From positions 1 to 42,178 of the forward strand of contig NW_021835209.1 in the NCBI RefSeq assembly GCF_006345805.1: a stretch of 42,178 bases of DNA, read 5' to 3'. This document shows, piece by piece, positions 18,176 through 19,930 of the stretch (the stretch's first letter is position 1; every line of letters starts with the position of its first letter). The stretch is from Octopus sinensis (Eukaryota). Both the position numbers and the translations under genes were made by a program. Under the pieces are notes generated by a model. That model was not told where the DNA came from, ran no database searches, and saw only the letters and a program-made list of their open reading frames with translations.

Positions 18176-19930
18176 TTCCAAGAACATTCCAGGAAGTAAT
18201 TCCTCCCGTTCCTCTCCCTCTTCGGAACTTTCCTGGAAGTAATTCCTCCCCTTCTTCCCCTACTCGGAACTTTCCAAGAAGTAATTCCTGCTCATCCTCG
18301 GAGCTTTCCGGGAAGGGATGACGGGGAGCAACGACTTCCTTGAAAGTTCCGAGGAGTGGGATGAAGGACGTCCTGGAAAGTTCCGAGGAAAGGAAAGACT
18401 CCCTGGCACGTTCGAAGTTTGGGAAGTATTTTCTGGAAAGTTCCTCGGAAGGAGTTGGGAAGAAAGTGAAGAAAAAGAGAGGAGAGACTTCCTGAAAAGT
18501 TCCGAGGAGAGGGGTGAAGGAGTTCCTGGAAAGATCCGAGTGTGGGAAGGAAGGAATTACTGGAAATTTCCGATGAAGGGGATGAATTGAAGGAACGACT
18601 TCCTGGAAAGTTCCGAGAAGGAGAACAAGGAAGAGGAAGGAAAGTTCGGAGAAGAGCATTGAAGTACTTCCTGGAAAGTTCCGAATAAGGGGAACGATTC
18701 CTGGAATGCTCCGATAAAGCGGTGGAAGGATGGAGCCAGCTGACACTGCACACTTCATCCCCTTCCTCGGAAGTTCAAGGAAGTTTATCCTCCCTTTCCC
18801 CCATCCTGCCATTTCTCGTTCTTTTCTTCCACTTCCACCTCTGCCCACACCCCGCGTACTGATTCCAAAGAAAGACGCAACATCAGAAAGAAAGTTCCGA
18901 GGTGGAAGAACTTCCTGGAAAGTTCCGAGGAGGTAAGGATTGGGAGGAACAATTTTCTGGAATGTTCCGAGGAGAAGGATAATTGGGCGGATGTGGAGGA
19001 ACGAATTCCTGTAAACAATTTTCTGGAATGTTCCGAGGAGAAGGACAATTGGGCGGATGTGGAGGAACGAATTCCTGGAAGTGGTGAGGGGAGGAAGGGG
19101 GAATGGGAAGTGATGAGGGAGGGAAGGGGAAGAGGGGAGGGGTGGAAGAGGGGAGGTGGGGAGGAGAGGGGAGGGGGAGAGGGAGGGGTGGAAGAGGGGA
19201 GGTGGGGAGGAAGATGGGGAGGGGGAGAGGGGAGGGGGAGGGGGAAGAGGGGAGGGGGAAGAGGGGAGGGGGAAAGAGGGGAGGGGGGAGGGGGAAGAGG
19301 GGAGGGGGAGGAGAGGGGGAGGGGAGGGGAGGAAGAGGGGAGGGGAGGGGAGGAAGAGGGGAGGGGGAAGAGGGAGGGGGAAGAGGAGGGGGAGGAAGAG
19401 GGGGGGGGGAAGAGGGGAGGGGAGGGGAGGAAGAGGGGGGGGAGGAGAGGGGAGGGGAGGAAGGGGGTGTGGGAGAGGAAGTTGGAGGGGAGGAAGAGGG
19501 AAAGGGAGGAACGACTTTGTGGAAAATTGCGAGTATATGGAAGAATGAGAGAAAGGGGATGAACGACTTCGTGGAAAGATCCGAGTTGGGTGGTGAAGGA
19601 CTTCCTGGAAAAGTACGAGGAAGGGGACAAAGGGGAGGAAGGGTATGAAGGATGGGAGGATGGTCTTCCTGGAATATTTCCGAGGTGGGAGAGGAAAGAC
19701 TTTCTAGAATATACCCAGGAGGGGGATGAAGGGGATGAATGGGAGGAAGGTGGGAAAGGCATCCTGGAAAGTTCTGAGGAAGGAGTGAAGAACTTCCCGG
19801 AACGTTCCGAAGCAGGGGAGAAATGGTAGGAACAACTTTCTGGAAAGTTCCGAGGGCGGGGATGAAGAACTTCCTGAAAATGTCCGAGGAGGGAGATTAA
19901 GGGGAGGAAGGACTTCCTGGAAAGTTCCGT
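18176..19930. repeat. degenerate GA-rich minisatellite with core ACTTCCTGGAAAGTTCCGAGGA, inverted segments and a central G-rich tract
   Basis: Roughly 25-30 core copies spaced about 35-65 bp; 18176-18310 and about 18745-18840 are in the opposite orientation; 66-bp exact-type duplication at 18949-19078. Confidence 0.85.

What the first reader, a model, noticed from the sequence alone, without database searches (positions are those of the whole stretch)
18176..19930. Minisatellite whose core is a composite heat-shock-element / STAT-like motif
Seen: the spacers drift freely but the core TTCCTGGAAAGTTCC is retained in roughly 25-30 units. There are at least 12 exact TTCCNGGAA sites and four perfect nTTCn-nGAAn-nTTCn triplets (18430-18444, 18954-18968, 19020-19034, 19837-19851). 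Established: TTCN3GAA is the STAT GAS site, inverted nGAAn pentamers are the HSF binding element, TGGAAANNYNY is the NFAT5/TonEBP element, and human satellite III recruits HSF1 into nuclear stress bodies. Inference: this may be a stress-responsive repeat or a transcription-factor sink in a cephalopod. Core conservation against divergent spacers is what a binding constraint would produce, but satellite history alone could also explain it.
Basis: partly seen in the sequence, partly recalled or inferred. Interest (0 to 1): 0.7.

Follow-up and report, generated by a model that had tools for sequence, protein, structure and literature searches.

The report
Ordinary degenerate minisatellite with GGAA/TTCC core
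This is a real but ordinary 1.8-kb tandem repeat of about 28 decayed 34/43-base units in junk-rich non-coding DNA. Its resemblance to heat-shock and STAT binding sites comes from one short GGAA/TTCC palindrome copied many times, and nothing here shows that any factor binds it.

Summary
Window 18176-19950 carries a degenerate minisatellite. A profile HMM finds 28 units, all inside the array. There are 25 matches to TTCCTGGAAAGTTCC at 3 or fewer mismatches (4 exact), 13 exact TTCCNGGAA sites, and four TTCnnGAAnnTTC sites at exactly the stated coordinates.

- The units are 34 or 43 nt long, giving a 77-nt higher-order period.
- The conserved block is about 27 nt (GGAAnnAC-TTCCTGGAAAGTTCC-GAGGA), not 15.
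- The "spacer" is only a 7-16-nt purine run that varies mostly in length.
- Five units are inverted.
- A 433-nt, 97%-purine, G-quadruplex-prone block sits inside the array.

The core is more conserved than its flanks (88% against 72-75%). Four hypervariable columns carry most of that contrast. The consensus is a perfect STAT-type palindrome but not a canonical three-pentamer heat-shock element. It also matches ETS, Rel/kB-like and TonE consensus sequences, so the matches are generic GGAA/TTCC half-sites.

The array lies beside a truncated SINE head and a piggyBac remnant, in a window that is 39% tandem repeats. No relatives could be retrieved.

Best reading: a neutral minisatellite shaped by slippage, unequal exchange and small inversions. 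The transcription-factor sink idea is untested and I rate it unlikely (about 0.1).

The parts
18176..18315 (-). First block of the array: four units in inverted orientation, with cores at 18181, 18224, 18266 and 18300 and a period of about 43 nt
   Evidence: family D13; nhmmer - strand hits 18180-18316, E 8.6e-5 to 1.2e-7. TRF gives period 43, 2.5 copies, 86% matches.
18316..18735 (+). Second block: 10 clear forward units of 30, 34, 43, 59 or 68 nt, plus one half-decayed core at about 18639-18652
   Evidence: (families D2-D4).
18745..18860 (-). Inverted pyrimidine-rich segment (26% purine on the + strand) holding one decayed unit at 18759-18790
   Evidence: - strand hit, E 5.5e-4; composition; D13 fourth copy 18760-18801.
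18861..19077 (+). Third forward block: units at 18912, 18954 and 19020 plus partial cores at 18890, 19004 and 19072. It includes a 66-nt duplication (18948-19077) that is 98% identical.
19078..19510 (+). Purine-only expansion of the spacer sequence, of the (GGGGAGG/GAAGAG)n type. It is 97% purine, 69% G+C, has no CpG, and holds 11 non-overlapping G-quadruplex motifs.
   Evidence: these are the only + strand G4 motifs in the 42-kb window, and the only pyrimidines are 14 T. TRF gives periods 14, 16, 21, 48, 98 and 136.
19511..19950 (+). Fourth forward block: 10 units, with a 77-nt (34+43) higher-order period at 19762-19929
   Evidence: (period 77, 2.2 copies).
18147..18175 (+). Left flank: the first 29 nt of a tRNA-like SINE, cut off exactly where the array begins
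   Evidence: 27 of 29 nt match the full copy at 4840; only positions 1-29 of the 451-nt copy at 4840-5290 match here. Searches show the sequences.
18084..18140 (.). Left flank: (AT)n microsatellite
17532..17648 (-). Left flank: zinc-finger end of a decayed piggyBac-type transposase. The remnant runs from about 17500 to 18075, with stops and frameshifts.
   Evidence: Pfam PF13842 zf-Tnp_2, 25.6 bits against a cut-off of 24, E 1.8e-5. One search gives the three-frame translation.

Best explanation
This is a neutral, degenerate minisatellite.

An ancestral unit of about 34-43 nt was amplified by replication slippage and unequal exchange. The unit reads GGAAnnAC TTCCTGGAAAGTTCC GAGGAG followed by a short purine run, and it was probably organised as a 34+43 = 77-nt dimer. 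It has since decayed to about 80% identity.

The complex part of the unit changes only by point substitution. The purine tail behaves like a microsatellite: it slips, changes length, and in one place ran away into a 433-nt pure-purine block. That difference in mutation process makes the tail look as though it drifts while the core looks conserved.

Two small inversions, possibly from fold-back or template switching, put five units on the other strand and created a near-palindrome at about 18316.

The transcription-factor look-alikes follow from the unit being built of alternating GGAA and TTCC tetramers.

Shown here: the anatomy, the counts, the conservation profile and the context. Inferred: the mechanism and the neutrality.
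For: - Unit lengths cluster at 30, 34 and 43 nt, with 52-68-nt double units whose second core has decayed. There are 77-nt and 66-nt higher-order duplications.
- The variable tail is purine-only and varies by a 9-nt insertion or deletion. The 433-nt block of the same composition is 97% purine.
- The conserved block spans about 27 nt, not the 15-nt motif. Four hypervariable columns carry most of the core-to-flank contrast.
- Decayed cores exist at 18400, 18639, 19004, 19072, 19516 and 19701, so the core is not protected from decay.
- Inverted blocks are present, and the junction folds at -64 kcal/mol with z = -5.5.
- The context is junk-like. 39% of the window is tandem repeat. The array abuts a truncated SINE head and a broken piggyBac transposase. 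The window holds no credible coding ORF, no tRNA and no Rfam family.
- A second purine-only minisatellite lies 3 kb away at 22775-23846.
Against: - The core is significantly more conserved than the flanks under a uniform-rate star model, even with the ascertainment step modelled.
- Across the 30-nt block, the GGAA/TTCC tetramer columns are less variable than the columns between them: 3.6 against 7.8 mismatches per column, post hoc p = 0.004. A GGAA-reading protein would leave that pattern.
- CpGs in the unit are retained. The CpG columns are no more variable than average, and CpG outnumbers GpC in the unit blocks.
- Neutrality is inferred from a single locus with no comparative or functional data.
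Confidence: 0.7

Rival explanations
1. The array is a functional cluster of transcription-factor sites: a stress- or cytokine-responsive enhancer, a factor sink, or the seed of a stress-induced non-coding transcript. Dimeric or trimeric GGAA/TTCC-reading factors (STAT, HSF, ETS, Rel/NFAT) would bind many units at once, and selection would keep the tetramers intact.
For: - 13 exact TTCCNGGAA sites, 20 TTCNNNGAA sites, 8 ETS CAGGAAGT sites and 4 perfect three-pentamer heat-shock elements.
- The core is more conserved than its flanks.
- Tetramer columns are more conserved than the columns between them.
- Precedents exist for repeats that bind factors. Human satellite III binds HSF1 (PMC2241877, PMC7889540). 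The HRAS1 minisatellite binds rel/NF-kB proteins (Trepicchio and Krontiris 1992, as cited in PMC3464111). GGAA microsatellites bind EWS-FLI1 (PMC13268648).
Against: - All sites are copies of one ancestral unit, so enrichment over shuffles says nothing about selection.
- The consensus is not a canonical heat-shock element.
- The motif fits at least five factor families, so no particular factor is indicated.
- The essential C of TTC is among the most variable core positions, while the non-contacted centre of the palindrome is conserved.
- Several cores are fully decayed.
- No gene is visible within the 42-kb window for it to regulate.
- At 1.8 kb with about 28 sites it is tiny as a sink, compared with the very large pericentromeric satellite III arrays (their size is stated from my own knowledge).
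Confidence: 0.1
2. The array is the internal tandem-repeat region of a dispersed mobile element, or a member of a genome-wide satellite family, rather than a locus-specific minisatellite. Its sequence would then reflect the element's history.
For: - It is embedded among mobile-element debris: a SINE head cut exactly at the array edge and a piggyBac remnant 100 nt away.
- Another tandem array in this window does derive from a SINE: the 111-nt satellite at 33450-35156.
Against: - No other copy of the unit, not even a solitary one, exists in the other 40 kb of the window.
- The unit has no similarity to either SINE family present in the window.
- No terminal inverted repeats or target-site duplication were seen around it by eye.
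- Exact-match scans of the public contig collections gave only single chance hits, but those collections hold no animal genomes, so this is weak evidence.
Confidence: 0.15
3. It is a structure-prone, recombination-active minisatellite of the classical G-rich, strand-asymmetric kind. Its G-quadruplex/triplex block and palindromic junction would make it a fragile or hypervariable site, and that would be its main biological effect.
For: - The + strand is 65-70% purine in the unit blocks and 97% in the 433-nt block, which holds 11 G4 motifs.
- The inverted junction folds with z = -5.5.
- Unit lengths are variable and internal duplications are recent.
Against: - G4 motifs occur only in the purine block, not in the units themselves.
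- No population data are available to show hypervariability.
- This reading is compatible with the best explanation rather than opposed to it.
Confidence: 0.3

Closest known systems
Classical G-rich, strand-asymmetric minisatellites with variant repeats (for example human CEB1 with 37-43-nt units, or HRAS1 with 28-nt units)
   Same: Tandem units of tens of bases. Variant units and variable unit length. Purine/pyrimidine strand asymmetry. Higher-order duplications. G4-prone sequence. HRAS1 units are also reported to bind rel/NF-kB proteins (reference list of PMC3464111).
   Different: Units here are much more diverged (about 80% identity). Five are inverted. G4 motifs are confined to one expanded spacer block rather than present in every unit. 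Nothing is known about polymorphism or binding. The CEB1 details are recalled from memory and were not tested.
Human satellite III, the HSF1 target that seeds nuclear stress bodies
   Same: A tandem repeat rich in GGAA/TTCC-type pentamers that can be read as nGAAn units.
   Different: Satellite III is a 5-nt (GGAAT)n-based pericentromeric satellite forming very large arrays, with proven HSF1 binding and heat-induced transcription (PMC2241877, PMC7889540). The 5-nt unit and the array size are from my own knowledge. Here the array is 1.8 kb with 34/43-nt units, its consensus is not a canonical heat-shock element, and there are no binding or expression data.
GGAA microsatellites used as response elements by EWS-FLI1 (ETS domain)
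   Same: Repeated GGAA cores. The unit here contains a full ETS consensus, CAGGAAGT, on the - strand in 8 units.
   Different: Those are pure head-to-tail (GGAA)n tracts read by an oncogenic fusion protein (PMC13268648). Here GGAA and TTCC alternate in inverted orientation within a complex unit.
STAT GAS element TTCCNGGAA
   Same: The consensus unit holds a perfect 9-nt palindrome, TTCCTGGAA. There are 13 exact copies.
   Different: GAS elements are normally single or paired sites in promoters, not about 28 tandem copies. Conservation within the core does not follow the STAT contact pattern.

Membership tests
Minisatellite (tandem repeat with units of roughly 10-100 nt) | Head-to-tail copies of a unit of tens of bases | tested here: met
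   28 units by profile HMM. Spacings of 30, 34 and 43 nt. TRF periods 43, 66 and 77.
Heat-shock element (HSF site) | At least three contiguous inverted nGAAn pentamers (nTTCnnGAAnnTTCn) | tested here: not met
   The consensus TTCCTGGAAAGTTCC has TCC in the first pentamer. Only 4 of about 28 units meet the definition, through a C-to-T variant, and two of those are copies of one 66-nt duplication.
Heat-shock element (HSF site) | HSF binding and heat-inducible activity | not testable with these tools
   Needs EMSA or CUT&RUN, plus RNA-seq after heat shock.
STAT GAS element | The palindrome TTCN3GAA, optimally TTCCNGGAA | tested here: met
   20 TTCNNNGAA and 13 TTCCNGGAA in the region, against 1.4 and 0.19 in shuffles. 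This is a sequence match only.
STAT GAS element | Conservation that follows the STAT contact positions | tested here: inconclusive
   Contact columns average 2.2 mismatches and the other core columns 3.9 (p = 0.04, post hoc). However, the essential C has 7 mismatches and the free central base only 3.
Satellite III-type stress-body repeat | Very large pericentromeric array of GGAAT-type 5-nt units, transcribed after stress | tested here: not met
   The array is 1.8 kb, its units are 34/43 nt, and it is flanked by unique and mobile-element sequence. Transcription cannot be tested here.
SINE-derived satellite | Unit homologous to a SINE present in the genome | tested here: not met
   The unit consensus hits only the array. 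Neither SINE family in the window matches the units. Only the 29-nt SINE head abuts the array.
G4-forming minisatellite (CEB1 type) | A G-quadruplex motif in each repeat unit | tested here: not met
   All 11 G4 motifs lie in the purine block 19078-19510, and none in the units.

The most novel reading that the evidence does not exclude
The array is a selected platform of GGAA/TTCC half-sites. It could be bound cooperatively by a STAT, ETS or Rel-type factor. Alternatively, given its about 27-nt conserved block, it could be bound by a long tandem zinc-finger protein of the kind that, as I recall it, is greatly expanded in octopus genomes. Either way it would act as an inducible enhancer, a factor sink or a chromatin anchor.
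Probability: 0.07. Interest if true: 0.5.

Novelty: new member of a known kind. Interest (0 to 1): 0.15.

Why it matters
If the ordinary reading is right, the finding matters little. It is one more minisatellite in a window that is 39% tandem repeat.

It is a useful caution. A short palindrome built of GGAA and TTCC matches the consensus of at least five transcription-factor families. Once such a unit is amplified, it produces motif "enrichment" that reflects a single origin.

If the array did bind a factor in vivo, it would be a first example of a repeat-borne factor platform in a mollusc. That would need bench data.

Tried and rejected
1. Related loci. Exact scans with TTCCTGGAAAGTTCCGAGGA gave 5 single hits in metagenome contigs, 1 in bacterial/archaeal genome contigs and 0 in viral contigs. 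None has a second core or any flank similarity, so they are chance matches. These collections hold no animal genomes, so the question of whether the unit is dispersed or unique stays open.
2. Translated arrays. I searched the 5.8-billion-protein collection with the 226-aa ORF that runs through the array on the - strand. 592 word-sharing candidates were collected and none scored E<=1e-3. An exact look-up of the 325-aa ORF found no record.
3. Literature. No paper contains the core sequence on either strand. Nothing relevant came up for octopus plus minisatellite. A 2026 octopus repeat annotation gives only general context: 66% repeats, 11.6% SINE, piggyBac present (PMC13282606).
4. Coding repeat. 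Rejected: unit lengths of 34 and 43 nt are not multiples of 3, and the ORFs across the array are low-complexity artefacts.
5. RNA gene. No tRNA and no Rfam family anywhere in the window.
6. CpG decay as the cause of the hypervariable nn in GGAAnnAC. Rejected: the variants are GG, GA, AG, TT, GT and CA, with no TG. The unit's other CpG (TCCGAGG) is no more variable than average.
7. The rest of the truncated SINE, or of the piggyBac ORF, on the far side of the array. Nothing was recognisable by eye in 19930-20135.
8. Taxon. The cephalopod assignment could not be checked with any tool. I chose not to spend a second large protein search on it.

Full report
**What is there**

Reading 17900-20200 shows a tandem array running from 18176 to about 19950. 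The 15-mer TTCCTGGAAAGTTCC, allowing up to 3 mismatches, matches 26 times in the 42-kb window. Of these, 25 lie inside 18181-19928, while shuffles of the window give 0.75. Only four matches are exact.

A profile HMM built from the units finds 28 units at E<1e-3. All lie within 18180-19935. No unit, not even a solitary decayed one, occurs elsewhere in the window.

- 13 exact TTCCNGGAA
- 20 TTCNNNGAA
- 13 TGGAAANNYNY on the + strand, plus 1 on the - strand
- 4 TTCnnGAAnnTTC, at exactly the coordinates given

All of these greatly exceed dinucleotide-preserving shuffles of the region itself.

**Anatomy**

I segmented the array at the cores. Unit lengths cluster at 30, 34 and 42-46 nt. There are also 52-68-nt "double" units in which a second core has decayed. 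TRF reports periods of 43, 66 (two copies, 98% identical) and 77 nt, which is 34+43.

A MAFFT alignment of the single units gives the consensus GGAAnnAC TTCCTGGAAAGTTCC GAGGAG gGGGGA, with an optional 9-nt purine extension. So about 27 of the 34 nt are conserved. The "spacer" is a 7-16-nt purine run that varies chiefly in length.

The array is not uniform in orientation:
- Four units at 18176-18315 are on the - strand.
- One decayed unit inside 18745-18860 is also on the - strand.
- The first inversion makes a near-palindrome centred at about 18316. As single-stranded DNA it folds at -64 kcal/mol, with z = -5.5 against shuffles.

Between 19078 and 19510 the purine tail has expanded into a 433-nt block. 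This block is 97% purine, and its only pyrimidines are 14 T. It contains 11 non-overlapping G-quadruplex motifs, which are all the + strand G4 motifs in the window.

**Is the core more conserved than the rest?**

In a gapless alignment of the first 30 nt of all 27 segmented units, identity to the consensus is:
- 88% in the 15-nt core
- 75% in the 8 nt before it
- 72% in the 7 nt after it

A uniform-rate star-phylogeny simulation never reached the observed contrast of 0.148. A version that copies my ascertainment step (keeping only units with 5 or fewer core mismatches) reached it in at most 0.2% of runs. Rate heterogeneity among columns is strong (chi-square 94, 29 df). Because the units are related to each other, these p-values are optimistic.

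Most of the contrast comes from four hypervariable columns: the nn of GGAAnnAC, and columns 27 and 29. Without them the core has 11.9% mismatches and the flanks 17.8% (p = 0.03).

Post hoc, the columns inside GGAA/TTCC tetramers average 3.6 mismatches and the columns between tetramers 7.8 (p = 0.004). This is the only feature that hints at a protein footprint. It could equally reflect unit subfamilies. Column 1 (T or G) and the nn columns track the alternation of 34- and 43-nt units, which points to a 77-nt ancestral dimer.

**Do the motif matches point to particular factors?**

The consensus is a perfect STAT-type palindrome (TTCCTGGAA). It is not a canonical heat-shock element, because its first pentamer reads TCC. 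Only a C-to-T variant gives three perfect pentamers. That variant occurs in four units, two of which are copies of the 66-nt duplication.

The same unit also contains:
- the ETS consensus CAGGAAGT on the - strand (8 exact copies)
- a kB-like GGAAAGTTCC
- TonE

The unit is essentially GGAA and TTCC tetramers alternating at spacings of 4, 1, 2 and 2 nt. Any factor that reads GGAA will "match" it.

Within the core, conservation does not follow the STAT contact pattern cleanly. The essential C of TTC is changed in 7 of 27 units, while the free centre of the palindrome is changed in only 3. Fully decayed cores exist at 18400, 18639, 19004, 19072, 19516 and 19701. Because every site descends from one amplified unit, the enrichment over shuffles is evidence of amplification, not of selection.

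**Surroundings**

To the left lie three features:
- An (AT)n microsatellite at 18084-18140.
- The first 29 nt of a tRNA-like SINE (18147-18175). It matches 27 of 29 nt of a full 451-nt copy at 4840-5290 and is cut off exactly at the edge of the array.
- A broken piggyBac-type transposase on the - strand. Its zinc-finger end reaches Pfam's cut-off: PF13842, 25.6 bits against 24, at window 17532-17648.

To the right there are about 170 nt of unique sequence, then TG/TA microsatellites.

The window has no credible coding ORF, no tRNA and no Rfam family. TRF covers 39% of it with tandem repeats. A second purine-only minisatellite lies at 22775-23846. The array is therefore one of many tandem repeats in mobile-element-rich non-coding DNA.

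This repeat content fits what is published for octopus genomes: 66% repeats, 11.6% SINE, piggyBac present (PMC13282606). From memory, the SINEs also resemble octopus SINEs. The taxon was not verified by any tool.

**Comparative evidence**

None could be obtained. Exact scans of metagenome, prokaryote-genome and viral contigs with a 20-mer gave only isolated chance matches. A protein-space search with the ORF that runs through the array found nothing. An exact ORF look-up found no record. No paper contains the core sequence.

**Interpretation**

The best-supported reading is a neutral, degenerate minisatellite (confidence 0.7).
- It was amplified by slippage and unequal exchange from a unit of about 34/43 nt.
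- Its purine tail evolves like a microsatellite. That explains the length variation and the 433-nt runaway block.
- Its complex part changes only by substitution. That explains why the core looks conserved.
- Two small inversions explain the - strand units.

It has no positive evidence beyond generic motif matches and a modest, post hoc conservation pattern, so I give it about 0.1.

A dispersed mobile-element or satellite origin (0.15) cannot be judged without the genome. A structure-prone, hypervariable locus (0.3) is compatible with the main reading.

**Comparison with known cases**

The array belongs with classical variant-repeat, strand-asymmetric minisatellites.

It resembles human satellite III only in being rich in GGAA. 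Satellite III is a 5-nt-unit pericentromeric satellite forming very large arrays (these details are from my own knowledge), with demonstrated HSF1 binding and heat-induced transcription (PMC2241877, PMC7889540).

Two precedents show that repeats can bind factors. The HRAS1 minisatellite is reported to bind rel/NF-kB proteins (Trepicchio and Krontiris 1992, cited in PMC3464111). GGAA microsatellites are bound by EWS-FLI1 (PMC13268648). In each of those cases binding was shown experimentally, not inferred from sequence.

**Verdict**

The interpretation cannot be decided here and leans towards ordinary. Interest is low.

Noticed in passing
window 33450-35156: A 111-nt satellite with about 15 copies at 96% identity. 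Its unit is the reverse complement of the 5' part of a tRNA-like SINE family, so this is a SINE-derived satellite. Dispersed copies of that family lie at 13943-14636, 24583-24910, 32965-33123 and 36513-37056.
   Followed up: partly
window 36566-36939: Two tandem 183-nt copies (90% identical) of the same SINE family on the + strand, followed by further fragments up to about 37056.
   Followed up: partly
window 41584-42155: Three tandem copies of a 190-nt unit at 97-99% identity, running almost to the end of the window. There is no other copy in the window, and the origin is unknown.
   Followed up: no
whole window: 39% of the 42 kb is tandem repeat by TRF, and 26% has a period of 6 or less. This includes many long impure trinucleotide arrays, such as (TGG)n 808-1427, (GTA)n 7845-8210, (ATG)n 20982-21598, (ATC)n 25344-25743, (TAT)n 26255-26769 and (CAT)n 31102-32027. 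No credible protein-coding ORF was seen.
   Followed up: partly
window 22775-23846: A 1.07-kb purine-only minisatellite on the + strand, with periods 16, 31 and 37 (GAGGAAGAAGAGAAAGAGGGAGGAAGAGGAA). Its composition resembles the 433-nt purine block inside the array studied, but it contains no TTCCTGGAA cores.
   Followed up: partly
window 4840-5290: A full-length copy of a second tRNA-like SINE, starting GGAGGCGCAATGGTCCAGTGGTTAGGGCAGCGGACTCGCGG. It is followed by a (GAA)n(GAG)n tail at 5281-5344. ARAGORN and Rfam do not call its head a tRNA.
   Followed up: partly
window ~17500-18075 (- strand): A decayed piggyBac-type transposase C-terminal half with stops and frameshifts. Its zinc finger reaches the Pfam cut-off. 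The N-terminal half is missing, and the ORF is cut at the (AT)n tract just left of the array.
   Followed up: partly
window 18176-18460: The junction between the inverted and forward units forms a roughly 140-nt-arm imperfect palindrome. As single-stranded DNA it folds at -64 kcal/mol with z = -5.5. It is a possible cruciform or fold-back site and a trace of how the inversion arose.
   Followed up: partly
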